Virus record (IMG/VR): IMGVR_UViG_3300042934_000980
Location: 124,001-188,000 of that record
Length of the DNA stretch: 64,000 nucleotides
Direction: 5' to 3' (one strand)
Made by a program: the position numbers and the translations under genes. This document shows positions 17,211 through 60,175 of this stretch, one piece after another. The notes under the pieces were generated by a model. The model had not been told where the DNA came from. It did no database searches and saw only the letters and a list, made by a program, of their open reading frames with translations. Every line of letters starts with the position of its first letter. The first letter of the stretch is position 1.

Positions 17211-17227
17211 GTAATATAGGTTTAAAA
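17211..17227 (-). promoter_or_regulatory. Phage early (vRNAP) promoter
   Basis: TTTTAAACCTATATTAC on the minus strand, 35 nt before the HNH start; TATATTAC is the phiKZ early promoter core. Confidence 0.75.
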
Positions 17228-28729: not shown

Positions 28730-31582
28730 ATGTTTAATATGTTTTCAGTCGGAGTCAAGCAAACGGGAGTGTATACCCATATCACTGGCGTTTCTTTTTA
28801 CAGCATTGCCAAGGACATTGAGAAGTTCTTCAGCTCCGGGCTGGTGACCAAGTACATGGTGCGCCGGGAGACGTGGGACACCATCAAGGTCCATGACTTC
28901 TTTCTGGTGGAGCTGCATTACATTCTGGGTGAGCTGCTTAAGATCCGCACCATTCGCAGCCGCAGGCGTGCACTGAGCGAACTTAAGTACCTGCTAGAAA
29001 CTGAGACGTGGATCAAAGACACCCTGACCCCGTCGGGCAAACCGTTTGACTTTAAACGGCTCAATGACTTTGTCAAAACGCCGTTTCCTAAACAGCGTGA
29101 ATTCTTGGAACAATACCCGCTGATTGAAAAGAGCTACCACCTGAGGGGCATCCTGCTCGACTCAGTGGCCGGTAGTGGTAAGGCTCAGCCGTACTCCACC
29201 AAGGTTAAAGTCCCTAAGGGATGGAAACACTTGGGGGAATTGAAAGTGGGGGAAGAAGTGTCCACCCCAGACGGCGACTACGCCAAGATCACCGCCGTGC
29301 ACCCACAAGGGGTCACTGACGTATACCGCTTCCACTTTGAAGATGGGCGTTGGGCTGACTCGCACCCTGAGCACTTGTGGCAGGTCGATGAGATCAGTCG
29401 TATACAAGGCGAGGAGATCATCAGCGCCGACCACATCACCACCACCCAAGACATCCTTAACCACTTCCAAGACTACGAGTACCAGATCCCTTTGGTGGGA
29501 CAGATGGACGGGCTCTTGGAGATGGGTGGGGTTGAGCATGCAGCCATAGCGGAAGAGTTGCTGATCTCAGCAATACCGATAGATGATCCAGTGATGGAAC
29601 TTTCCTACTTGGACCGGTTTGGTATCGTGCGCTCGATGTTGGAGCTGAGCGGCTGTCAGATTGCCCCTACCGGGATTGCGTTCATCACCACCAACCAAGT
29701 GGCGGCTAAGAACTTCCAGAAGCTGGTGTGGAGCGTGGGCGGGATTGCCACGTGGACCGAAGTTCCGGGTAACCCCTTCCGGATTGAACTCTACCACCCG
29801 CAAATTGAATTGATGGTGGAGAACCTGCTCGGTCCTGGGCTGGAGCTGGGGGAGATCATCAGTTTGGAAGATCACCTCAACCTGCGCCTCAAGATCACCG
29901 CGGTGGAGAAACGGCCTCAGGAAGAGACGCTCTGCATCTCGATCGATCACCACGCCCACCTGTACGTCATTGACGACTACATCATCACCCACAACACCTT
30001 TACCTCGCTGATGTGGGCGCATCTGTTGGGTGACGGAGCGACGGTGGTGGTGTGTCCGTTGGGGATTGTTAACGATGTATGGACCAAACAGATCAAGGAG
30101 CACCACAAACAAGAGAAGCGGGTGTGGACCAGCATCAGCGGGCTGCCGCTTGCAGAAGGGTACGACTTCTACATCGTGCACTACGACTTCCTGCGGGGAA
30201 CTGGCTACGGCTACTTAAAGGAGTTCTTGCTTAAGCTTAAAAAGTCCAGCAAGCACGAACTTAAGTTGATCTTGGATGAGTCGCACAACTTTAACGAGAT
30301 CAGGGCCAAGCAAACCCAGCGGTTGATAGAACTGGCGGACCTGCAAGTGTTTGACCATTCCCTGCCCATGTCGGGGACCGCCCTTAAAGCCCAAGGCAGT
30401 GAGATCTACCCCACGCTGTGCCTGATTGACCGGCACTTTGATAAGGTGGCTCGCGAGTTCTTCTTGGCCTCCTACGGGCGTAACCGCCAGTCGCTCATGA
30501 ACATGCTGGCGCACCGCATTGGTCGGGGTAAGTTCACCATCCCAGAACTCTTGGGCTTGGGCGATCCACCTCCGATCAATGTCATCAAGGTGCAAATCCC
30601 GGGTGGGCAGAAGTACACCTTGGATGCGATCAAGCTGGAGATGCAGGTGTACATCCAAGAGCGCATGGCGTTTTACGATGAGCACATGCCCAAGTACCTG
30701 GCCTTCTACAAGGAGGTGTTGTCCAGTTACGAGTTCTCCGTGCAAAAGCACCCCAAGGAGCTGGCGGACCTGCAACGCTATAAAGCCATCGTTAACCGGT
30801 TCCGCACCCAAGGGTATTCCAGTTTCACCGACGCCCAAGACAGTGCATTCTGTAAGCGGGTGGAGGAGGACATTGAGAAGACCCTTAAAGGTCAAGACCT
30901 GCACGATTTCCGCAATGTGAAGTCGGCGGTCAAGTACCTAGGGCTTAAACTGCGCGGCGAAGCGTTGGGTAACGTGTTGGGTAAAGCACGCATCAATGCG
31001 ATCAAGGAAACCATCGAGCACGCAGGCTTACCCGAGCTGATCAACAACGTGGAGAAGAAGACGGTTATCTTCACCTCCTACGTCGACGTTGTGAAGCTCT
31101 GTGATGAGTACCTGCGCGATAAAGGCTTTAAGCCTAACTTGGTCTACGGGGAGGTTAACAAAGACCGTGAAGAGGCTGTCAGAAGCTTTGGTGCGGTGCC
31201 TGAGATCAATCCGTTGATTGCGGCCATGGATTCTCTGAAAGAGGGTATTCCGTTGCTGATGGCCAACCAAACCATCTTCCTCAACGCGCCTTACCGGGAT
31301 TACGAGGTCAAGCAGATGCAAGCCCGTACCTGGCGTACCGGTCAAGACAGCCCGTGTTTCTACTGGCTGATTGACTTGGACACCGGGGATCAGGTGAACA
31401 TCACCACGCGCAGCCTCAACATCTTGGAATGGAGCCGAGAGCAGGTGGATGCATTGCTCAGCCGCAGTGAAGGTCATGCCCTGCTGGGGGATGTAACCGG
31501 TGAAGAAGCCTTTAGCTTGGTGGACGAACCTGTAACCAAACCTTTGCAGGTAAGAGCCGGAGTACTCAGTCTCTTTGGGTAA
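28730..31582 (+). CDS. SNF2/SF2-family helicase containing an intein
   Basis: AAGGA SD before ATG 28730; ILLDSVAGSGK|T, VVVCP, LILDESHN, MSGT, EGIPLLMAN, QMQARTWRTGQ. Confidence 0.9.
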   Translation: MFNMFSVGVKQTGVYTHITGVSFYSIAKDIEKFFSSGLVTKYMVRRETWDTIKVHDFFLVELHYILGELLKIRTIRSRRRALSELKYLLETETWIKDTLTPSGKPFDFKRLNDFVKTPFPKQREFLEQYPLIEKSYHLRGILLDSVAGSGKAQPYSTKVKVPKGWKHLGELKVGEEVSTPDGDYAKITAVHPQGVTDVYRFHFEDGRWADSHPEHLWQVDEISRIQGEEIISADHITTTQDILNHFQDYEYQIPLVGQMDGLLEMGGVEHAAIAEELLISAIPIDDPVMELSYLDRFGIVRSMLELSGCQIAPTGIAFITTNQVAAKNFQKLVWSVGGIATWTEVPGNPFRIELYHPQIELMVENLLGPGLELGEIISLEDHLNLRLKITAVEKRPQEETLCISIDHHAHLYVIDDYIITHNTFTSLMWAHLLGDGATVVVCPLGIVNDVWTKQIKEHHKQEKRVWTSISGLPLAEGYDFYIVHYDFLRGTGYGYLKEFLLKLKKSSKHELKLILDESHNFNEIRAKQTQRLIELADLQVFDHSLPMSGTALKAQGSEIYPTLCLIDRHFDKVAREFFLASYGRNRQSLMNMLAHRIGRGKFTIPELLGLGDPPPINVIKVQIPGGQKYTLDAIKLEMQVYIQERMAFYDEHMPKYLAFYKEVLSSYEFSVQKHPKELADLQRYKAIVNRFRTQGYSSFTDAQDSAFCKRVEEDIEKTLKGQDLHDFRNVKSAVKYLGLKLRGEALGNVLGKARINAIKETIEHAGLPELINNVEKKTVIFTSYVDVVKLCDEYLRDKGFKPNLVYGEVNKDREEAVRSFGAVPEINPLIAAMDSLKEGIPLLMANQTIFLNAPYRDYEVKQMQARTWRTGQDSPCFYWLIDLDTGDQVNITTRSLNILEWSREQVDALLSRSEGHALLGDVTGEEAFSLVDEPVTKPLQVRAGVLSLFG
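29183..29995 (+). mobile_element. Class 3 intein (271 aa) in the helicase Walker A motif, with a degenerate endonuclease remnant
   Basis: GSGK/AQPYSTKV...HPEHLW...TLCISIDHHAHLYVIDDYIITHN/T; Ala1 and the W-C-T triplet. Confidence 0.9.
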
Positions 31583-31595
31583 TATAGGTTCTAAA
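31579..31595 (-). promoter_or_regulatory. Early promoter motif oriented antisense to the helicase
   Basis: TTTAGAACCTATATTAC overlapping the helicase TAA. Confidence 0.6.
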
Positions 31596-33689: not shown

Positions 33690-33706
33690 GTAATATAGGT
33701 CTAAGA
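33690..33706 (-). promoter_or_regulatory. Early promoter
   Basis: TCTTAGACCTATATTAC, 35 nt before the HD gene. Confidence 0.75.
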
Positions 33707-52673: not shown

Positions 52674-52690
52674 GTAATATAGGTTTCAGA
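52674..52690 (-). promoter_or_regulatory. Early promoter
   Basis: TCTGAAACCTATATTAC. Confidence 0.75.
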
Positions 52691-53000: not shown

Positions 53001-53594
53001 TCAGACGGCTGGTTCTTCTGGGAAGGTCAGTTGACCATAATCGGTATCAGGGATGGTGAACACCTCAGCTTGCGCCACGGCGTGAACAACGCTACCCCAG
53101 ATGCACGGGGCGTCGATCGACACAGTGGTGGCGTCTGCGGTGACTTCTTGATCCAGCGTGTCGTACTTGAGCGCTGTGGCAAACGCAGCTTTGGCAGCAG
53201 CAGGACGGTCAGCTTCGGCTGTGCCGTGCGGCAGCAAGATTGCGATCTTGGTGGTGGTCCCGTCTTCGTCCAGGAACGCGTAGGTGCCGGGTACTACCAG
53301 CGCCTTGACCGCGTCAAAGTCTTCGTAGACGGTAGCATCCGTCATGTCGTAACCGCGGGCGCTGTTGGGGTTTGCAGCGGTCCAAGATTGCTCCAGACCG
53401 ATAAAGCGACGCGCTGCCGACTTTACGGTAGCCGAACGCAGACCATTGGCACCTGACGTGATGTCTTCGAAGGAGAGTTCTGCTTCAGTCAAACCGTCGA
53501 ACAACGCTTTCTTCTCAGCATCGTCTTTATAACGATTCAGGTTGAAAGCCACGAAACGGGTGACGAACAGACTCATCCGGGAGGATTTAGCCAT
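53001..53594 (-). CDS. Probable virion protein (paralogue family)
   Basis: Similar along its length to 53711-54280 and 38441-39025; TTATG upstream at about 53641. Confidence 0.75.
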   Translation of the reverse strand: MAKSSRMSLFVTRFVAFNLNRYKDDAEKKALFDGLTEAELSFEDITSGANGLRSATVKSAARRFIGLEQSWTAANPNSARGYDMTDATVYEDFDAVKALVVPGTYAFLDEDGTTTKIAILLPHGTAEADRPAAAKAAFATALKYDTLDQEVTADATTVSIDAPCIWGSVVHAVAQAEVFTIPDTDYGQLTFPEEPAV

Positions 53595-53710: not shown

Positions 53711-54280
53711 TTAGCCGTTGAGGTCCATCGGCTCACCTGGCTGCAGTTCAGCTACAGGCGCCTTGGCGACCACGTAGTCGACTTCACCGTAGATGGTGTC
53801 GCCTTCCACGATGATGGTGCCATCGGTCGCGGTGATCTGGTCAGCCGGGATGTCGTACTTGAGCGCGTCGATCAGCACGGCAGTGGCGGCGTCGGCTTGC
53901 TGGGCTTCAGCGGTGCCTTCGGCGATGACCACAACGGCCTTGGCGTCAGCGCCTTCGCCGACCAGGTACACACCAGGCTCTTGCTTGGCTTGTGCCGCGT
54001 CCGTGTCAGCCAGTGTCTCGCTGTCGGTCAGGGTCAGGACTTTGGGGCTGTTGACATTGGCCGACTTCCAGGTCTGATCAGGCCCGGTAAAGTTGCGACC
54101 TTGCGAGTCGATGTTGGCGGTGCGCACGCCATCGGCTTGGTGCTGGATGTTGGTGATCTGCAGATCTTCCAGGGTCAGGCCTTCGAAGCTCTTCAGCATT
54201 TCCTTGTCGGCTTTGTACAGCTGCTGGTTCTTCTGAACGAAAGGCCCCAGCAGAAGGCTTAGGGGCGATTGCTTGCTCAT
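53711..54280 (-). CDS. Probable virion protein (paralogue family)
   Basis: F.GLT..L...I...A.G.R.A...S..R.F.G..Q.W..AN.NS and ALKYD shared with 53001-53594. Confidence 0.75.
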   Translation of the reverse strand: MSKQSPLSLLLGPFVQKNQQLYKADKEMLKSFEGLTLEDLQITNIQHQADGVRTANIDSQGRNFTGPDQTWKSANVNSPKVLTLTDSETLADTDAAQAKQEPGVYLVGEGADAKAVVVIAEGTAEAQQADAATAVLIDALKYDIPADQITATDGTIIVEGDTIYGEVDYVVAKAPVAELQPGEPMDLNG

Positions 54281-54550: not shown

Positions 54551-54578
54551 TACTACCTCAAAGATACAAAAAAGAAAA

Positions 54579-54602
54579 GCAAGGGAAATGACTCTCCCTT
54601 GC
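54579..54602 (-). terminator. Terminator of the chaperonin gene
   Basis: GCAAGGGA..TCCCTTGC followed by TTTTCTTTTTT on the minus strand. Confidence 0.75.
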
Positions 54603-54614
54603 CTTACTTAGGTC

Positions 54615-56336
54615 TTAGTGCGTCTTGACCGCGTGCAGCTTGTCGCCCAACAGCAGGCTGCTGGCATTGGCCAAGATCTTGGCTGTTTGCAGGCCGCCCT
54701 TAAGCGCTGTGACCAACGCGAACGCAGTGTCGTACACACCCAGGTCTTGAGCTTGTCCCGTTTCACCGGTGGCCAAGTTGGTGATGTCCGGTACATTACC
54801 TGCGTACTTTTTGAGCAGCTCTGGCAGGTCAGGTATGTACGCACCCTCGTCGCTTTGCTTGGCCAGATGCACGTACGGCACGCACACCAGCTCGGCTAGG
54901 CGTTCGAGGATCTTTGCATCCGTCTTGTCCCGGGCGAAGGTCACCGGATACAGGCTTTCCTTATTCTTGGGGGCAAGGACCACATGGTCTTGGTGATGGC
55001 AGTGATCATAAAGATCCGACAACACCAACAATCCAGCCTTCATCAACGAGGTACCGGCGCCTGGCAGAATGCCGTTGTCCAACGCACTCTTGACCGCCTT
55101 GACGACGTCCTCGAACCGATCCAAACGCTCCTTCACGTCCGAATAGGTTTCACCGCCCACAAAGATGGTGACCAACTGGCCGCGCAGGTTACGGATCCGG
55201 CTTTCGTTGAACTTGGCGCGTACGCTGAAACGGTCACCCATTTCGTACCCGCTCAGTTCTTGCTCGATGGCATCAGCACGCTGCTGCACGCGCACTAAGG
55301 CATTAGCATCCAGCTCGCTCACCAACGAGCGGCTGTTGCCGACCGTGACGTGCATGTTCGGAACGTTGAACTCCGCACCCACCGCGTCTTGCAGCTGAGT
55401 GAACATCGGCACGCCAAAGATGGTGGCGATATCACCCATGATCAAGCTGCCCACCGAACCACCGGCGTTGGTGTTGATCCCCACGAAAGTTGGGCCGCCC
55501 AGGAAGGTGTTGACCATTCCACCCATGCGTGCACTGGATTTTACTTGGTTATTGATGTTGGCCATGACAGCCCCCACCTCATGCTCGATCGAGCGGGCAA
55601 TGATAAGGATGTGGTCGGTCTGGCCCTTGAACTGGTCATGCAGCTTGATCAGCTCATCGGTCAGGTCCGCACCACGCCCCAGCGTACCGTCGATCACCAC
55701 CGGGATGAAGTTTTCCAGCAAAGTGTCGGCACCGTTGCCGTACTTGCTAAAGCCTGGGTTACTGAAACTCATGTTCAGTGGCAGGCCGTTGCTGTGCACC
55801 ACCTTGTCTTCGCTGCTCTGGCCTTCCTTGAGCTCGATGGCAGGGTAACGATCACCCGACTGCTTGTAGATGTCGGTGATGATGGTCGACAGCTCGTGGT
55901 CGCTGTTGGAGGAGGTCAGGGCCAGCTTGAACAACCGATCGTCTTCCGGGGTAACCTGGATGGCGAGGCTGCGCAGCTTCTTGCCGATCTCACCGATCAC
56001 TTGCTCGATGAAACGCTGTTCACGAAAGCTCTTGAACTGGCTGAGCACGCTGTACAGTTCAGCGGTCAACATGACGGTGGTGGTGGTGCCATCGCCACAC
56101 TCGTGGTCGGTCTTGATCGCCGCTTCAACGATCACCCGGTTAATGACCTCATCACGCGGGTCATCGAACTTGATGGACTTGGCGACCGTCACGCCATCCT
56201 TGGTGACCTTAACCGAGGTGCCGGTGCCGATCAAAGCGAGTTTGCCATTGGGACCCATGGTGGCCACAACTGCTTGGTGTACCTTGGTCATGACGTCTTT
56301 GACCATGTCCTGGGTGTTATCCAAAGTCAGCAGCAT
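54615..56336 (-). CDS. groEL: GroEL-like phage chaperonin (EL gp146-type)
   Basis: TMGPNG, VTKDGVTVAKSI, GDGTTT, KERLDRFEDVVKAVKSALDNGILPGAG; no GGM tail. Confidence 0.95.
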   Translation of the reverse strand: MLLTLDNTQDMVKDVMTKVHQAVVATMGPNGKLALIGTGTSVKVTKDGVTVAKSIKFDDPRDEVINRVIVEAAIKTDHECGDGTTTTVMLTAELYSVLSQFKSFREQRFIEQVIGEIGKKLRSLAIQVTPEDDRLFKLALTSSNSDHELSTIITDIYKQSGDRYPAIELKEGQSSEDKVVHSNGLPLNMSFSNPGFSKYGNGADTLLENFIPVVIDGTLGRGADLTDELIKLHDQFKGQTDHILIIARSIEHEVGAVMANINNQVKSSARMGGMVNTFLGGPTFVGINTNAGGSVGSLIMGDIATIFGVPMFTQLQDAVGAEFNVPNMHVTVGNSRSLVSELDANALVRVQQRADAIEQELSGYEMGDRFSVRAKFNESRIRNLRGQLVTIFVGGETYSDVKERLDRFEDVVKAVKSALDNGILPGAGTSLMKAGLLVLSDLYDHCHHQDHVVLAPKNKESLYPVTFARDKTDAKILERLAELVCVPYVHLAKQSDEGAYIPDLPELLKKYAGNVPDITNLATGETGQAQDLGVYDTAFALVTALKGGLQTAKILANASSLLLGDKLHAVKTH

Positions 56337-56390
56337 TTACGTGTTCTCCGTACAAGTTTAAAAAGTTAATGGTTGCTGTGCTACGGGTAA

Positions 56391-56407
56391 GTAATATAGG
56401 TTTCAGA
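56391..56407 (-). promoter_or_regulatory. Early promoter of groEL
   Basis: TCTGAAACCTATATTAC, identical to the copy at 52674. Confidence 0.78.
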
Positions 56408-56493
56408 TTTGCTTACAAAAAACAAAATGGCGGCATAGAGGTTAGGGACCTCCCCTCAAGCCTGTTGGCCCGACTAAAGGGGAGGGTGTTGCT

Positions 56494-56859
56494 CTACGAA
56501 GCCTGGGCAGCCTTTTTGGACTGCCACGGTTCTTTCTGGACCAGGAAGAGAAGTTTTTCCTTGTTGTGCTCTTCAAACACAAACGCTGAGTCAGCGACAA
56601 AGCGGTGCGGTTCGGTAACCGAAATCAACACCTCAAAGTCAATGCCTTGCTCCAGGATATTCTCCACCTGCCCAATGCAGTCTTGGCTGTCCACGTCACC
56701 TTCTGGTTGCATGACCAGTAGCACTAAGCCGCTGTCGATCATCAACTTCAGGCGCTCGTACTGTTCAGGCTCAAGGACGTTGGGAACTTTAACGGTAATC
56801 ATGGGGTCCTCAGGTAATATACCCGCCTCAGTGATGCAACAGTGAAAAGGGGTAACCAC
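56494..56859 (-). CDS. Hypothetical protein (weak resemblance to the Lon N-terminal domain)
   Basis: 121 aa; LEPEQY..LM...LLVMQP...IGQVENIL...EVLI....RF. Confidence 0.55.
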   Translation of the reverse strand: MVTPFHCCITEAGILPEDPMITVKVPNVLEPEQYERLKLMIDSGLVLLVMQPEGDVDSQDCIGQVENILEQGIDFEVLISVTEPHRFVADSAFVFEEHNKEKLLFLVQKEPWQSKKAAQAS

Positions 56860-56864
56860 TACCC

Positions 56865-57212
56865 CTACACGATTTTAGGTTTACGCATGTCTTTCATGAT
56901 GCGAAACGAGGTGTCGTCGTGGGCCAGTCTGAGTGGCTCACGGGTGCTCTCGTGTTCTTGTCGTTCCGCTTCATTACGTTCTGCGTGCGCTAGGTGTTCA
57001 TTCAAGTCCGACTCGCGACCTTGGGTGTAGAGCTCGTAACAGGTTTGACACATGAGGTGATGCTCAGCGCCCCATTTGTCGTGCTTAGCCAGATAACCAA
57101 ACGCTTGATCACCCTCATGGAGGTGTTCACAATGGTCACCTTCAGATACCCGGCCATCCTCACAGAACCCTACTAACCGCTCTGTCGGACCCCAGGTAAT
57201 CCAGGTGTCCAT
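56865..57212 (-). CDS. Zn-binding protein, paralogue 1
   Basis: HCEHL...LMCQTCYE. Confidence 0.75.
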   Translation of the reverse strand: MDTWITWGPTERLVGFCEDGRVSEGDHCEHLHEGDQAFGYLAKHDKWGAEHHLMCQTCYELYTQGRESDLNEHLAHAERNEAERQEHESTREPLRLAHDDTSFRIMKDMRKPKIV

Positions 57213-57214
57213 TA

Positions 57215-57760
57215 TCAGTCATCCTTTTCAGGTTTGGGTGGGGGTTGCTTCTTTACCGCCTTGGGGAGTTTAAACACTTGGATCTTGCCCCCGGTATGAG
57301 GATCCATGTCCTTGGCCAGTTTAATGGCCCCTTTAGCACCCTTACCTAAGCGCAGCGCAGCTTCGGCGTGAATGCCACCTGACCCGATACCAAAGGGGAC
57401 GTAACACCGTGTTACGTTGAAGGTGTCGGGGACGTTAGCCCCTTGCTTGTAACTGCCCTGTATCGACCACCCATTATGAAACTCATCGATCACAATGGCT
57501 GAAAAGCTCATCTTGGTCGCGATCTTAAGTTCAGTGCGGTGAGTGATCCCTTCTTTGCTTTGCAAGGCTTCTTTAATGAAAAGCTCACAACCTGGCTGCC
57601 CTGCCCGTCCAAAGGCAATCACTCGCTGGCCCATGATTTTCCATTCTTCCCCGACCTCAGGAAAAAGGATCTTCCTTACCGTGGCATTGGAAATAATCCC
57701 GCCACGCACCCGACGTGAATCGGAAGCGAGTTTGCCTTTTGTCCAAATAACTGTAGTCAT
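57215..57760 (-). CDS. HslV/proteasome-beta-like Ntn peptidase
   Basis: MTT N-terminus, LASDSR, KI, GRAG, GIGSGG..A.AAL..G..A..AIKLA..MD..TGG. Confidence 0.82.
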   Translation of the reverse strand: MTTVIWTKGKLASDSRRVRGGIISNATVRKILFPEVGEEWKIMGQRVIAFGRAGQPGCELFIKEALQSKEGITHRTELKIATKMSFSAIVIDEFHNGWSIQGSYKQGANVPDTFNVTRCYVPFGIGSGGIHAEAALRLGKGAKGAIKLAKDMDPHTGGKIQVFKLPKAVKKQPPPKPEKDD

Positions 57761-58197
57761 AGGTCGTCTTCTCTATCCCAGTGTTCGTCGTCCAGCGATT
57801 CCATTTCTTCACGGTCGCGGTCGATCTCTTGTTGATCTCGCAGCAACCGATCCTTGTGCCGGGCTTCTTGTTGACAGCCTTTGCAGATACGCATGCGGAT
57901 CCGTTCGTACTCAGGAGTGCCTGGGTCGTACGGGGTGTAGGTTACAGTCTGACTGCGCGGAAACTCACCCCCGCAGTCGTGGCACGTGGTCGGCTCTTCC
58001 CGCTTCTCCACCACGAACTTCTCGTAGCAGGGCTTGCACATCAGGTACATCTCAGAGCCGAACGAATCGTGCTCAGACGAATGCCCGAACACTTCACCCC
58101 CATTGTCCAAGTGTTCGCAGTGACCGCCCTCGCAAACATTCCCATCCATGACAAACCCAACTTCTTTGTGGGTCAAGCCAAAGGTAGTCCAACCCAT
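57757..58197 (-). CDS. Zn-finger protein, paralogue 2 (extra CxxC...CxxC)
   Basis: GGAG SD before MGWTT; HCEHL, LMCKPCYE, CHDC, CKGC; ATGA-coupled to the peptidase. Confidence 0.75.
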   Translation of the reverse strand: MGWTTFGLTHKEVGFVMDGNVCEGGHCEHLDNGGEVFGHSSEHDSFGSEMYLMCKPCYEKFVVEKREEPTTCHDCGGEFPRSQTVTYTPYDPGTPEYERIRMRICKGCQQEARHKDRLLRDQQEIDRDREEMESLDDEHWDREDDL

Positions 58198-58198
58198 A

Positions 58199-58567
58199 TC
58201 AGTGCACTCCTTTGGGAGCTGAGTGGAGCATGGCAGGGGCGGTGACTTTGATCGAGCGCAGGTAATCTTCAGCCTGCACGTCAGCCGGGTGGAATTCGTT
58301 GAGCAGGTCGCAAACAAACTTGCCGATCTCTTGTTGCTGCACCGGATTGCCCTCGCGGTCAACAATAGCCGGTTTACCCGTGGCTTTGTCGGTACCCCGA
58401 AAGTACACGTCCCGGTACGCGTCAATCCGCTTACCCAAGCGCTTTTGGAAATTGGCCAGAAACGTTGCGGCGTCCTGATCACCTGCTTTGGCGCGTTCGT
58501 TGAGCTGGTTAAGCAGCCGGATGGTTGCAACTTCCAACGGGGAAAGGATGTTCTTGAAATGGTCCAT
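58199..58567 (-). CDS. Hypothetical protein
   Basis: 122 aa, AGGAG SD. Confidence 0.75.
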   Translation of the reverse strand: MDHFKNILSPLEVATIRLLNQLNERAKAGDQDAATFLANFQKRLGKRIDAYRDVYFRGTDKATGKPAIVDREGNPVQQQEIGKFVCDLLNEFHPADVQAEDYLRSIKVTAPAMLHSAPKGVH

Positions 58568-58723
58568 GGTACTTCTCCTACCAATACGGCGCTCATTTTG
58601 AGCTTAGGTTAATAACACCCTTACAAATATAAGGGCTGGTGGTCGGCAATGAGGGTGTTGCCTTTACGGATCAAGGTTTCACCCACGGTTAGCCCGTCGA
58701 TAACCCCTTTGATGTGGAACCGT

Positions 58724-59245
58724 TTACTTCCGTGCACCAGGAGGAAATCCCTCTTCCGGACTGATGTCACTTTGAAGATACTGTAAGTCTTTAGGAGACA
58801 GTACTCTTCGGTCTTCAGCGTCAGGGTTCGACTGGGCATCGAGATCATCCGTCTTGATCATCGACGAGCATTGGGTGTACAGCGACTTGTCCATGAACCC
58901 TGCATCAGAGTCCATTTCGTAATGGCTGATGCCGATGTTGGTCACCCCATGATCGTCTTTGTAGAGATAAAGGATCCGCGAATCTTGCTCCAGGTAATAG
59001 GTGGTAGCAAGCCCCGCTAACCCCACACTGGCCGGATCGACCGTGGTGAACACCTTGTCGCGAAACACCACACTGCCGGTGCCCAGCAAGAACACGTTGG
59101 TGCGCTCGTGGGTGTTGATGTTGTGGAAGTTGTCCGGGTTATTGGTGTAACCCACCTGACTGCAGACAATGGCGTCCACCGAAGACTGGGCCAGCGCTGG
59201 AGCTGCCAGCAGCAACCCCAGGGCCCCTGCGATCAAAGCTTTCAT
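58724..59245 (-). CDS. Exported protein with Sec signal peptide
   Basis: MKALIAGALGLLLAAPALA|Q; two Cys in the mature part; ATGA-coupled start. Confidence 0.75.
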   Translation of the reverse strand: MKALIAGALGLLLAAPALAQSSVDAIVCSQVGYTNNPDNFHNINTHERTNVFLLGTGSVVFRDKVFTTVDPASVGLAGLATTYYLEQDSRILYLYKDDHGVTNIGISHYEMDSDAGFMDKSLYTQCSSMIKTDDLDAQSNPDAEDRRVLSPKDLQYLQSDISPEEGFPPGARK

Positions 59246-59832
59246 GCACATGCTCCTTCAACAGCGTTGGAGAATTCGATCTGTTCGATCTGGGTCAGGT
59301 GGTCCGCCATGGCCTGGCGGAACTCTTCGATCTTTTCCTCGAAGCTGCCGGTGGTGTGGTCGACCCGGGTCACGTCCCAGCTGATGGCCATGTCAAACAG
59401 CCCCTCGCCAAAGATCTTGAGGTTCAGGGTGCCGTCTTTGCACACCGCATGAAAGTACATGGGCTTTTCTTGGCACAATACCTTGCTGTACGGGTACGCC
59501 ATGTTACCGCGTGCCCACAGCTGCACATCTTCCAGCACATCGATCTGTTCCAGAAGGTCTTGCTGGTAGTTCTTCAGCTTCTTGGTGACTTCCCACATCG
59601 GGACGCCCTTTACCGGGATGCGCACTTCGTTCTTCCAGCGCCCCCACTGACCGAAGTCAAAGTCCAGCTCAAACCACAACTCTCCCAGCCGGTTACGATT
59701 ACCGCGAGACAGAATAACAACATTACGCAGCGGAAACGAATCAGCCAGTTTACGATTTTGGAATAGAACAGCCATGGGTACAACTCCTAGTTTTTCAAAG
59801 ACTCCAATAGTCCCTGGTAAAAGGTAAAACAC
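59242..59832 (-). CDS. Hypothetical protein
   Basis: Up to 196 aa; start uncertain (AGGAG precedes an internal Met). Confidence 0.7.
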   Translation of the reverse strand: MFYLLPGTIGVFEKLGVVPMAVLFQNRKLADSFPLRNVVILSRGNRNRLGELWFELDFDFGQWGRWKNEVRIPVKGVPMWEVTKKLKNYQQDLLEQIDVLEDVQLWARGNMAYPYSKVLCQEKPMYFHAVCKDGTLNLKIFGEGLFDMAISWDVTRVDHTTGSFEEKIEEFRQAMADHLTQIEQIEFSNAVEGACA

Positions 59833-60158: not shown

Positions 60159-60175
60159 GTAATATAGGTTTGAAA
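60159..60175 (-). promoter_or_regulatory. Early promoter
   Basis: TTTCAAACCTATATTAC. Confidence 0.75.

What the first reader, a model, noticed from the sequence alone, without database searches (positions are those of the whole stretch)
54615..58197. Candidate phage proteostasis locus: GroEL plus HslV/proteasome-like peptidase between two paralogous Zn-finger genes
Seen: in one co-oriented run are a Zn-finger protein (57757-58197), ATGA-coupled to an MTT-starting Ntn hydrolase (57215-57760), then a second paralogue of the Zn-finger gene 2 nt later (both share W.T.G.T...VGF..DG.V.EG.HCEHL..G...FG....HD..G.E..LMC..CYE), a 121-aa ORF, and a GroEL with its own early promoter. No GroES or HslU-like ATPase is present in the window. 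Known: HslV and proteasome beta subunits use Thr1 and usually need partners; the EL chaperonin works without a co-chaperonin. Inference: a fold-or-degrade module in which the Zn-finger paralogues act as adaptors or activators of an ATPase-less peptidase, possibly targeting host defence proteins or removing protein tags. A hairpin and promoter separate groEL from the rest, so linkage to groEL may be positional only.
Basis: partly seen in the sequence, partly recalled or inferred. Interest (0 to 1): 0.72.

Follow-up and report, generated by a model that had tools for sequence, protein, structure and literature searches.

The report
Phage protease gene beside zinc-finger genes
A giant phage carries a proteasome-like protease gene wedged between two copies of a zinc-finger gene just upstream of its own chaperonin, but comparison with about fifteen related phages shows this is mostly gene shuffling in a variable region, not a conserved fold-or-degrade machine.

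Summary
On the minus strand lie Zn1 (57757-58197), an ATGA-coupled HslV/proteasome-beta-like hydrolase starting with Thr (57215-57760), a truncated paralogue Zn2 (56865-57212), a small ORF, and an EL-type chaperonin (54615-56336) with its own promoter motif and flanking hairpins. The 220-kb genome has no GroES and no AAA+ ATPase.

The window comes from an uncultured EL-related jumbo phage. The peptidase has the full catalytic residue set and a confident Ntn fold, but belongs to a small phage-specific family equally distant from HslV and 20S beta subunits. It is a second paralogue; the first sits beside the PhuZ tubulin gene, as in EL.

The proposed module is not conserved:
- The block upstream of groEL is hypervariable.
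- Ten related loci have the Zn gene without the peptidase, including the two closest relatives, where Zn1 and Zn2 are directly adjacent.
- Two loci have the peptidase without a Zn gene.
- More distant phages carry the two genes 90-145 kb apart, or only one of them.

A weaker link survives. In all four phages with both genes at this locus they are adjacent and overlap by 4 nt, once in reversed order. Complex prediction gave no answer. These are new members of known kinds, of modest interest.

The parts
60159..60166 (-). Early-promoter-like motif AACCTATATTAC. It probably starts the transcript that runs through o90, o196, o175, orf122, Zn1, the peptidase and Zn2.
   Evidence: TATATTAC occurs 7 times in the window against 0.28 expected and 12 times in the genome, always on the minus strand. 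The extended consensus (G/A)AACCTATATTAC follows a T-rich tract and resembles EL's annotated promoters.
58199..58567 (-). orf122, a small gene of unknown function. Its stop lies 1 nt before the Zn1 start.
   Evidence: A homologue sits in the same position in L045. It has no Pfam or PHROG hit.
57757..58197 (-). Zn1, a 146-aa zinc-ribbon protein of phage family phrog_8344. It has two predicted metal sites (C27/H29/C54/C57 and C72/C75/C105/C108) and an acidic C-terminal helix.
   Evidence: phrog_8344 at E 5.7e-24. The ligand columns are invariant or nearly invariant across 40 homologues. The AF2 model has pLDDT 89.6. No fold match beyond generic Zn ribbons was found.
57215..57760 (-). HslV/proteasome-beta-like Ntn threonine peptidase, 181 aa. 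It is the second paralogue in this genome, with candidate catalytic residues T2, D14, K30, G126-S127-G128 and D153...T156-G157-G158.
   Evidence: phrog_1040 at E 4.9e-25. The AF2 model has pLDDT 96.4. Top PDB fold hits are HslV and 20S beta subunits at TM about 0.6. Conserved residues are shown. The ATGA overlap with Zn1 is seen.
56865..57212 (-). Zn2, a 115-aa truncated paralogue of Zn1. It keeps only the first metal site.
   Evidence: E 8.6e-18 against Zn1. Orthologues of 115 aa lie directly after Zn1 in L044 and L045.
56842..56870 (-). Hairpin followed by CUUUUC just after the Zn2 stop. It is a possible weak terminator.
   Evidence: RNA fold energy -12.8 kcal/mol.
56494..56859 (-). Small ORF of 121 aa as listed, probably 102 aa from the ATG at 56802. 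It belongs to a family of ~95-aa genes that always lies just upstream of groEL in relatives.
   Evidence: Homologues are found in L008, L018, L024 and L044-L046. It has no family or fold lead. A TATATTAC lacking the extended consensus lies at 56814-56821.
56434..56498 (-). Strong hairpin followed by a U-run. It separates the small ORF from the groEL promoter.
   Evidence: RNA fold energy -33.0 kcal/mol.
56391..56398 (-). Early-promoter-like motif AACCTATATTAC, 54 nt upstream of groEL.
54615..56336 (-). EL-type phage chaperonin (GroEL homologue), 573 aa.
   Evidence: phrog_5725 at E 6.8e-119 and Pfam Cpn60_TCP1 at 2e-24. It is 41% identical to EL gp146 over its full length.
54576..54605 (-). 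Intrinsic-terminator-like hairpin with a T-run after groEL.
   Evidence: 13-bp stem followed by TCTTTTTTGT. Fold energy -20.4 kcal/mol.

Best explanation
This is part of an early-transcribed accessory-gene region of an uncultured, EL-related, PhuZ-encoding jumbo phage.

**Components (shown).**
- The chaperonin is an orthologue of EL gp146. It is transcribed on its own, bounded by a promoter motif and hairpins.
- Upstream, between conserved flanks (gp139-like o175 and the ~95-aa genes plus groEL), lies a hypervariable block whose content differs between relatives.
- In this phage the block holds a tandem pair of zinc-ribbon genes, Zn1 and its truncated copy Zn2, with an extra copy of the phage-specific HslV/proteasome-beta-like threonine peptidase between them.

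**Peptidase mechanism (inferred).** The peptidase is most likely catalytically competent. Thr becomes N-terminal after Met removal, and the Asp/Lys/Ser/Asp set is present. Like HslV and 20S beta subunits it probably forms rings. It works without a phage-encoded unfoldase, either on unfolded substrates, together with the genome's other paralogue, or by borrowing host HslU.

**Zn proteins (inferred).** They are early proteins of unknown role found widely in jumbo phages. Their adjacency to the peptidase is a lineage-restricted co-expression arrangement, produced by local duplication, deletion and shuffling. It is not a conserved protease-adaptor system, and neither gene is functionally tied to groEL.
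For: **Identity of the phage**
- The window is part of a 220,495-bp IMG/VR virus record.
- It shares synteny with EL gp136-gp148 around groEL.
- A first peptidase paralogue lies next to a PhuZ-like tubulin gene, as EL gp15 lies next to gp16.

**Peptidase**
- PHROG hit, confident fold and conserved catalytic columns.
- The family is small: 180 representatives among 1.84 billion proteins.
- The Zn-locus copies form their own clade with 100/97 support.

**Variable block**
- Gene content differs across L008, L018-L024, L039, L040, L044-L046 and L054.
- The closest relatives, L044 and L045, have Zn1 and Zn2 adjacent with no peptidase. Their identities to the window are groEL 60-61%, p189 70-72% and Zn2 61-63%.

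**Transcription units**
- Enriched promoter motif and hairpins.

**ATGA coupling is not special**
- The genome has 54 candidate ATGA junctions with open frames on both sides.

**No unfoldase or GroES**
-.

**Literature**
- A jumbo phage with two HslV genes and no HslU has been reported (PMC7823757).
- An HslVU-family protein, RAY gp116, localises to the phage nucleus (bioRxiv 10.1101/2023.02.24.529968).
Against: - In all four phages with both genes at this locus (window, L008, L024, L015) the genes are adjacent with a 4-nt overlap.
- L008 and L024 are close relatives with the same flanking genes but opposite gene order. That fits the pair moving or duplicating as a unit.
- The peptidase is the most conserved gene of the locus. 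It is 65-69% identical between the window and L008 or L024, against 57-59% for groEL and 47% for Zn1. It is therefore not a decaying passenger.
- No activity, oligomeric state or expression has been measured for any of these proteins.
Confidence: 0.6

Rival explanations
1. Zn1 (and/or Zn2) is a dedicated cofactor of the Zn-locus peptidase clade, acting as adaptor, gate-opener, inhibitor or preferred substrate. The two genes form a mobile two-gene module. groEL is unrelated.
For: - Adjacency with a 4-nt overlap in 4 of 4 phages that have both genes at the locus, in three arrangements: Zn-pep, pep-Zn and Zn-pep-Zn.
- The reversed order between near relatives L008 and L024, inside identical flanks, is most simply explained by duplication of the pair followed by loss of the outer copies.
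- The Zn-locus peptidases form a distinct, well-supported clade. They share an invariant basic C-terminal KLPKAV motif, whereas the Zn proteins end in acidic tails.
- Most jumbo phages that have one family also have the other.
Against: - Ten loci have the Zn gene without the peptidase, including the window's closest relatives.
- Two members of the same peptidase clade have no Zn gene within 2-5 kb.
- In SPN3US, phiEaH2, Caitlin and pVa-21 the two families lie 90-145 kb apart.
- EL and Dewey have the peptidase only, and RSF1 has the Zn gene only.
- All adjacent arrangements could descend from a single ancestral event.
- ATGA overlaps are common in this genome.
- Complex prediction returned no answer, with score 0.00. 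This counts neither for nor against.
Confidence: 0.2
2. This is the full proteostasis-module reading. The chaperonin, peptidase and Zn proteins act together as a fold-or-degrade triage system.
For: The genes are co-oriented within 3.6 kb, and all carry early-type promoter motifs. groEL lies downstream of the Zn gene in 11 related phages.
Against: - groEL has its own promoter motif and is insulated by a -33 kcal/mol hairpin plus U-run upstream and a terminator downstream.
- EL keeps groEL and both flanks but has neither the Zn gene nor the peptidase at the locus.
- RisingSun has groEL but neither family.
- L039 has the peptidase with no Cpn60-family gene called in the 5 kb downstream.
- Most loci with Zn and groEL lack the peptidase.
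Confidence: 0.04
3. The phage peptidase is not a self-standing protease. It is a subunit that co-assembles with the genome's other HslV-like paralogue, or docks onto host HslU to redirect or block host HslVU.
For: - Every one of six complete or near-complete related genomes has at least two HslV-like genes. They occur as a tandem pair at the PhuZ-side locus, or as one copy there plus one at the Zn locus.
- In G002-G004 the second tandem copy begins MSV instead of MTT.
- The phage encodes no AAA+ unfoldase.
Against: - EL shows only one copy by tblastn and HMM.
- No oligomer or HslU-docking test could be run here.
- G001 has three copies, so a fixed 1:1 pairing is not obvious.
Confidence: 0.15

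Closest known systems
Pseudomonas phage EL gp146 chaperonin (PMC7185714)
   Same: A full-length homologue, 41% identical and in the same PHROG. The flanking genes match (gp139-like upstream; gp147- and gp148-like downstream). The genome has no GroES homologue.
   Different: It is only 41% identical. The genes directly upstream differ from EL gp140-145. The window phage and its relatives carry a family of ~95-aa genes immediately upstream that gave no tblastn hit in the EL locus at E <= 0.01.
Phage 'peptidase HslV family' proteins (phrog_1040), such as EL gp15 and Caitlin gp1. pSal-SNUABM-04 ORF1/ORF116 and RAY gp116 are reported in papers as HslV-family but were not scored against this family here.
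   Same: Thr directly after the initiator Met, conserved Asp/Lys/GSG/D..(S/T)GG motifs, a size of about 160-240 aa, no phage HslU, and more than one paralogue per jumbo-phage genome.
   Different: The window copy belongs to a separate, well-supported clade found only at the groEL-upstream variable locus. It is about 31-36% identical to the PhuZ-side paralogues and has its own invariant C-terminal KLPKAV motif.
Bacterial HslV (ClpQ) of the HslUV protease, and 20S proteasome beta subunits
   Same: An Ntn alpha-beta-beta-alpha fold (TM about 0.6) and equivalents of Thr1, Asp17, Lys33, Ser129, Asp166 and Ser169. As in HslV, there is no propeptide.
   Different: Identity is 17-20% and there is no Pfam hit. 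The family profile matches HslV and beta5 about equally weakly (E 1e-6 to 1e-8). No HslU partner is encoded. The loops before the Asp and the Lys are 3-4 residues shorter. The oligomeric state is unknown.
phrog_8344 zinc-ribbon proteins of jumbo phages (for example SPN3US ACQ60_gp164, phiEaH2 G173_gp027, RSF1 ORF172, pVa-21_188)
   Same: The same N-terminal (M)NW start, the CxH...CxxC...CxxC...CxxC ligand pattern, a conserved His after the last pair, and an acidic C-terminus.
   Different: In those phages the gene is single, lies next to an HTH protein or other genes, and is 90-145 kb from any HslV-like gene. Here it is duplicated, with one copy truncated to the first metal site, and it flanks the peptidase.

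Membership tests
HslV (ClpQ) peptidase of HslUV | N-terminal Thr nucleophile exposed by removal of the initiator Met (no propeptide) | tested here: met
   The protein begins MTT. T2 is nearly invariant across 78 family members and invariant within the clade.
HslV (ClpQ) peptidase of HslUV | Catalytic support residues equivalent to Asp17, Lys33, Ser129/Gly130, Asp166 and Ser169 | tested here: met
   D14, K30, G126-S127-G128 and D153...T156-G157-G158 are conserved. The profile alignment to proteasome beta8 places them on T1, D17, K33, GSG and D..SGG.
HslV (ClpQ) peptidase of HslUV | Ntn-hydrolase alpha-beta-beta-alpha fold of the proteasome beta/HslV type | tested here: met
   The AF2 model has pLDDT 96.4. 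Top Foldseek hits are HslV (4g4e, 4ho7, 1g3i) and 20S beta subunits, with probability 1.00 and TM about 0.6.
HslV (ClpQ) peptidase of HslUV | Sequence-level membership: closer to HslV than to other proteasome-type subunits | tested here: not met
   No Pfam hit at E <= 1. The family profile hits beta5/beta8 at 1e-8 and HslV at 1e-6. Only 180 representatives at E <= 1e-3 among 1.84 billion proteins; this reads as a separate phage family rather than cellular HslV.
HslV (ClpQ) peptidase of HslUV | Cognate AAA+ unfoldase HslU encoded with it | tested here: not met
   No AAA_2 or AAA domain in the 220-kb genome, and the controls were positive. Use of host HslU was not testable.
HslV (ClpQ) peptidase of HslUV | Double hexameric ring assembly and peptidase activity | not testable with these tools
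Activity needs a bench assay.
phrog_1040 (phage 'peptidase HslV family') | Significant full-length profile match | tested here: met
   E 4.9e-25 over residues 1-172. The paralogue at G000:C1:92349-93053 scores E 1.2e-24.
EL-type phage chaperonin (phrog_5725; Pfam Cpn60_TCP1) | Full-length chaperonin homology and no co-chaperonin gene | tested here: met
   E 6.8e-119 over residues 5-568. It is 41% identical to EL gp146 over 100% of its length. The genome has no Cpn10. Independence from a co-chaperonin is known for EL only (PMC7185714) and was not tested here.
phrog_8344 zinc-ribbon family | Profile match plus two four-ligand metal sites | tested here: met
   Zn1 scores E 5.7e-24 and has all eight ligands. 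Zn2 scores only 5.7e-07 over the N-terminal half and lacks site 2, so it is a partial member. Metal binding itself was not tested.
Conserved functional gene module (Zn finger + peptidase + chaperonin) | The neighbourhood is kept across related and distant genomes that carry the genes | tested here: not met
   Zn and peptidase are adjacent in 4 loci. There are 10 Zn-only loci and 2 peptidase-only loci. The genes are far apart in SPN3US, phiEaH2, Caitlin and pVa-21, and only one family is present in EL, Dewey and RSF1.

The most novel reading that the evidence does not exclude
The Zn-ribbon protein and the Zn-locus peptidase clade form a mobile two-gene cassette. In it, a small zinc protein with an acidic tail stands in for the missing AAA+ partner, acting as gate-opener, substrate selector or inhibitor of a phage proteasome-like protease. 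This would be an ATP-independent regulator of an HslV-type peptidase, used early in jumbo-phage infection. The Zn1/Zn2 duplication around the peptidase, and the reversed order in a near relative, would be footprints of the cassette duplicating as a unit.
Probability: 0.12. Interest if true: 0.7.

Novelty: new member of a known kind. Interest (0 to 1): 0.3.

Why it matters
If the ordinary reading holds, the value is in annotation.
- It separates a phage-specific proteasome-like peptidase family from true HslV.
- It shows that jumbo phages of this group keep two or more paralogues and no unfoldase.
- It maps a hypervariable early-gene block next to the EL-type chaperonin.
- It defines a promoter-like motif for an uncultured phage.

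The residual pair hypothesis is cheap to test with two recombinant proteins. If it were true, it would give the first non-ATPase partner for an HslV-type peptidase.

The wider open question is what an HslU-less HslV-like protease does in a nucleus-forming phage. It stays open, but it now has defined paralogue clades to work with.

Tried and rejected
- **Near-identity DNA search.** Megablast of 5 kb against 50,697 phage records gave no match, so the phage has no close cultured relative.
- **Pfam.** The peptidase, Zn2, the 121-aa ORF and orf122 gave no hit. Zn1 gave only sub-threshold FYVE/DUF hits, which I rejected as generic zinc-ribbon resemblance.
- **Fold searches for Zn1.** The PDB search gave nothing at E <= 0.001. 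AlphaFold DB clusters gave a best E of 3.8e-3 to an uncharacterised protein. The ESM Atlas gave only generic small zinc proteins. No functional lead came from any of them.
- **Atlas search for the 102-aa ORF.** It was uninformative, so the idea that it is a GroES analogue has no support.
- **Complex prediction.** Zn1 + Zn2 + peptidase returned 'no answer' with score 0.00.
- **More members of the Zn-locus peptidase clade.** Scans of metagenome and viral contigs returned only contigs already in hand, plus two distant family members.
- **ATGA overlap as a sign of special coupling.** Rejected, because the genome has 54 such candidate junctions.
- **The long 279-aa reading of Zn1 (start at 58596).** Rejected, because all homologues start at the MNW/MGW position and orf122 has its own homologue in L045.

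Full report
**1. Observation**

- Zn1 (57757-58197, 146 aa) ends in an ATGA overlap with the next gene.
- That gene (57215-57760, 181 aa) begins MTT.
- Two nucleotides after its stop begins Zn2 (56865-57212, 115 aa).
- A small ORF follows at 56494-56859. Relatives suggest it really starts at the ATG at 56802, giving 102 aa.
- groEL lies at 54615-56336.

Profile searches confirm the gene identities.
- Zn1 matches phrog_8344 at E 5.7e-24.
- Zn2 matches the same family at 5.7e-07, over its N-terminal half only.
- The MTT protein matches phrog_1040 'peptidase HslV family' at 4.9e-25.
- The chaperonin matches phrog_5725 at 6.8e-119 and Pfam Cpn60_TCP1 at 2e-24.

Zn1 and Zn2 are true paralogues, 47% identical over residues 3-73 at E 8.6e-18. 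Zn2 has lost the second of the two metal sites.

**2. Source genome**

The window is bases 124001-188000 of a 220,495-bp IMG/VR virus record that is 96% complete. It has no near-identical relative among 50,697 phage records.

The chaperonin is 41% identical to gp146 of Pseudomonas phage EL. The surrounding genes are syntenic with EL gp136-gp148: an acetyltransferase, a gp139-like gene, and gp147- and gp148-like genes.

The genome holds a second HslV-like gene at G000:C1:92349-93053. It lies next to a PhuZ-like tubulin gene, just as EL gp15 lies next to gp16. The phage is therefore an EL-related jumbo phage that encodes PhuZ.

**3. Transcription units**

TATATTAC occurs 7 times in the window against 0.28 expected, and 12 times in the genome. 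Every copy is on the minus strand.

Six of the seven window sites share the longer form (G/A)AACCTATATTAC after a T-rich tract. This resembles the promoters annotated in EL.

Three sites bear on this locus.
- A site at 60159-60166 precedes a run of seven genes that ends with orf122, Zn1, the peptidase and Zn2.
- A site at 56814-56821 precedes the small ORF but lacks the longer consensus.
- A full-consensus site at 56391-56398 precedes groEL.

A modest hairpin (-12.8 kcal/mol) follows Zn2. A strong hairpin (-33 kcal/mol) with a U-run precedes the groEL promoter, and a terminator follows groEL.

The chaperonin is therefore its own transcription unit. This is a sequence-based inference, since no RNA data exist.

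**4. The peptidase**

The AF2 model built on 78 homologues is very confident, with pLDDT 96.4. Its best PDB matches are HslV from E. coli, Trypanosoma and Haemophilus, together with 20S beta subunits. Foldseek gives probability 1.00, TM about 0.6 and 17-20% identity.

The catalytic columns are conserved: T2, D14, K30, G126-S127-G128, and D153 with T156-G157-G158. A profile alignment to proteasome beta8 places them on Thr1, Asp17, Lys33, the GSG loop and D166/S169. The active site therefore looks complete.

It is nevertheless not a close HslV.
- Pfam gives no hit.
- The family profile matches beta5 and HslV about equally weakly, at E 1e-8 to 1e-6.
- An exhaustive search of 1.84 billion representatives finds only 180 relatives at E <= 1e-3.

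No AAA+ protein is encoded in the genome.

Two published observations fit this picture. Salmonella phage pSal-SNUABM-04 has two HslV genes and no HslU (PMC7823757). [quoted passage not shown]

**5. The zinc proteins**

Forty homologues share invariant C27, H29, C54 and C57, nearly invariant C72, C75, C105 and C108, and an invariant H114.

The AF2 model (pLDDT 89.6) has a small beta domain, a zinc ribbon and a long acidic C-terminal helix.

The fold searches of PDB and AlphaFold DB clusters and the Atlas look-up returned only generic zinc ribbons. The function remains unknown.

Homologues occur in SPN3US-like, Erwinia, Vibrio and Ralstonia jumbo phages. In SPN3US and phiEaH2 the gene follows an HTH-protein gene. 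In none of the four loci inspected does it lie near an HslV-like gene.

**6. Neighbourhood survey**

This was the decisive test. I collected every relative I could reach. I scanned each locus with HMMs built for both families.

| Arrangement at the groEL-upstream locus | Loci |
|---|---|
| Zn and peptidase adjacent, 4-nt overlap | window (Zn1-pep-Zn2), L008 (Zn-pep), L024 (pep-Zn, reversed), L015 (Zn-pep) |
| Zn gene, no peptidase | L018, L019, L020, L021, L022, L023, L044, L045, L046, L054 |
| Peptidase of the same clade, no Zn gene within 2-5 kb | L039, L040 |
| Neither gene | EL |

The short contig that shares L015's peptidase protein has an upstream 167-aa gene that also overlaps the peptidase by 4 nt. 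That gene is probably the Zn-family protein P0175, which has the same length and comes from a contig of the same size.

The window's closest relatives are L044 and L045. Their identities to the window are groEL 60-61%, p189 70-72% and Zn2 61-63%. In both, Zn1 and Zn2 are directly adjacent with nothing between them.

At the whole-genome level the picture is just as loose.
- SPN3US, phiEaH2, Caitlin and pVa-21 have both families, 90-145 kb apart.
- EL and the 40-kb phage Dewey have only the peptidase.
- RSF1 has only the Zn gene.
- RisingSun has groEL and neither family.

The three-part module is therefore not conserved, and the link to groEL is positional.

**7. What survives**

Where both genes are present at the locus they are always adjacent and overlapping.

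L008 and L024 are close relatives. Both have the same upstream 201-aa gene and the same downstream gene, yet the order of the pair is reversed. This fits duplication of the pair as a unit followed by loss of the outer copies. The window's Zn1-pep-Zn2 arrangement could be such an intermediate.

The Zn-locus peptidases form their own clade with 100/97 support. They are the most conserved gene of the locus, at 65-69% identity against 57-59% for groEL and 47% for Zn1.

Three points weigh against a functional link.
- All arrangements may trace back to one ancestral event.
- ATGA junctions are common in this genome, with 54 candidates.
- The complex prediction of Zn1 + Zn2 + peptidase returned 'no answer', which is not evidence either way.

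**8. Paralogue pattern**

All six related complete or near-complete genomes carry at least two HslV-like genes.

| Genome | PhuZ-side locus | Zn locus |
|---|---|---|
| G000 (window) | 1 | 1 |
| G005 | 1 | 1 |
| G001 | tandem pair | 1 |
| G002, G003, G004 | tandem pair | 0 |

In G002-G004 the second tandem copy begins MSV rather than MTT. This hints at hetero-oligomers or specialised subunits. I could not test it.

**9. Verdict**

The proteostasis-module idea is not supported. A lineage-restricted Zn-peptidase pairing remains possible at low probability.

The components are new members of known phage families in a hypervariable early region. Interest is modest.

Noticed in passing
G000:C1:92349-93053 (outside the window); L028-L031, L034: Each of six related jumbo-phage genomes has two or three HslV-like paralogues. 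They occur as a tandem pair next to the PhuZ-side locus, or as one copy there plus one at the Zn locus. In three genomes the second tandem copy starts MSV instead of MTT, so it may use a Ser nucleophile or be an inactive subunit. This suggests hetero-oligomeric rings.
   Followed up: partly
window 17211-17218, 31579-31586, 33690-33697, 52674-52681, 56391-56398, 56814-56821, 60159-60166 (all minus strand): The promoter-like motif (G/A)AACCTATATTAC follows a T-rich tract. It occurs 7 times in the window against 0.28 expected, and 12 times in the genome, all on one strand. It resembles the promoters annotated in phage EL and could be used to map early transcription units of this uncultured phage.
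   Followed up: partly
window 56494-56802; L008:7085-7686, L018:2954-3560, L024:5096-5673, L045:6582-7141, L046:6758-7350, L054:6461-7053: One or two paralogous ~90-100-aa genes always lie immediately upstream of groEL in this phage clade. The window keeps only one. No family or fold lead was found. The EL chaperonin paper (PMC7185714) notes that an unrelated cofactor cannot be ruled out, so these are candidates worth testing.
   Followed up: partly
window 58621-59251 (minus strand): A 175-aa ORF with a signal-peptide-like N-terminus, related to EL gp139, overlaps a 75-aa ORF in another frame by 125 nt. Both frames find homologues in L045 (66% identity each), L039 and the EL locus. In the EL locus the second frame's match runs into the stretch with no annotated gene between gp139 and gp140. 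This may be an unannotated small gene or a frameshift product. No classic slippery site was found.
   Followed up: partly
window 53001-53594 and 53711-54280 (minus strand): Tandem paralogues related to EL gp147 (phrog_18233, with a weak match to a virion structural protein family) lie just downstream of groEL. The duplication is shared by L008, L018, L044, L045 and L046.
   Followed up: no
L016:4376-4855; L003:4001-4489 (phage Dewey): HslV-like peptidases of the same phage family also occur in small genomes. One is in a contig with P22-like early genes (Ant, HNH and HTH_3 domains) and one in the 40-kb phage Dewey. The family is therefore not restricted to jumbo or nucleus-forming phages.
   Followed up: no
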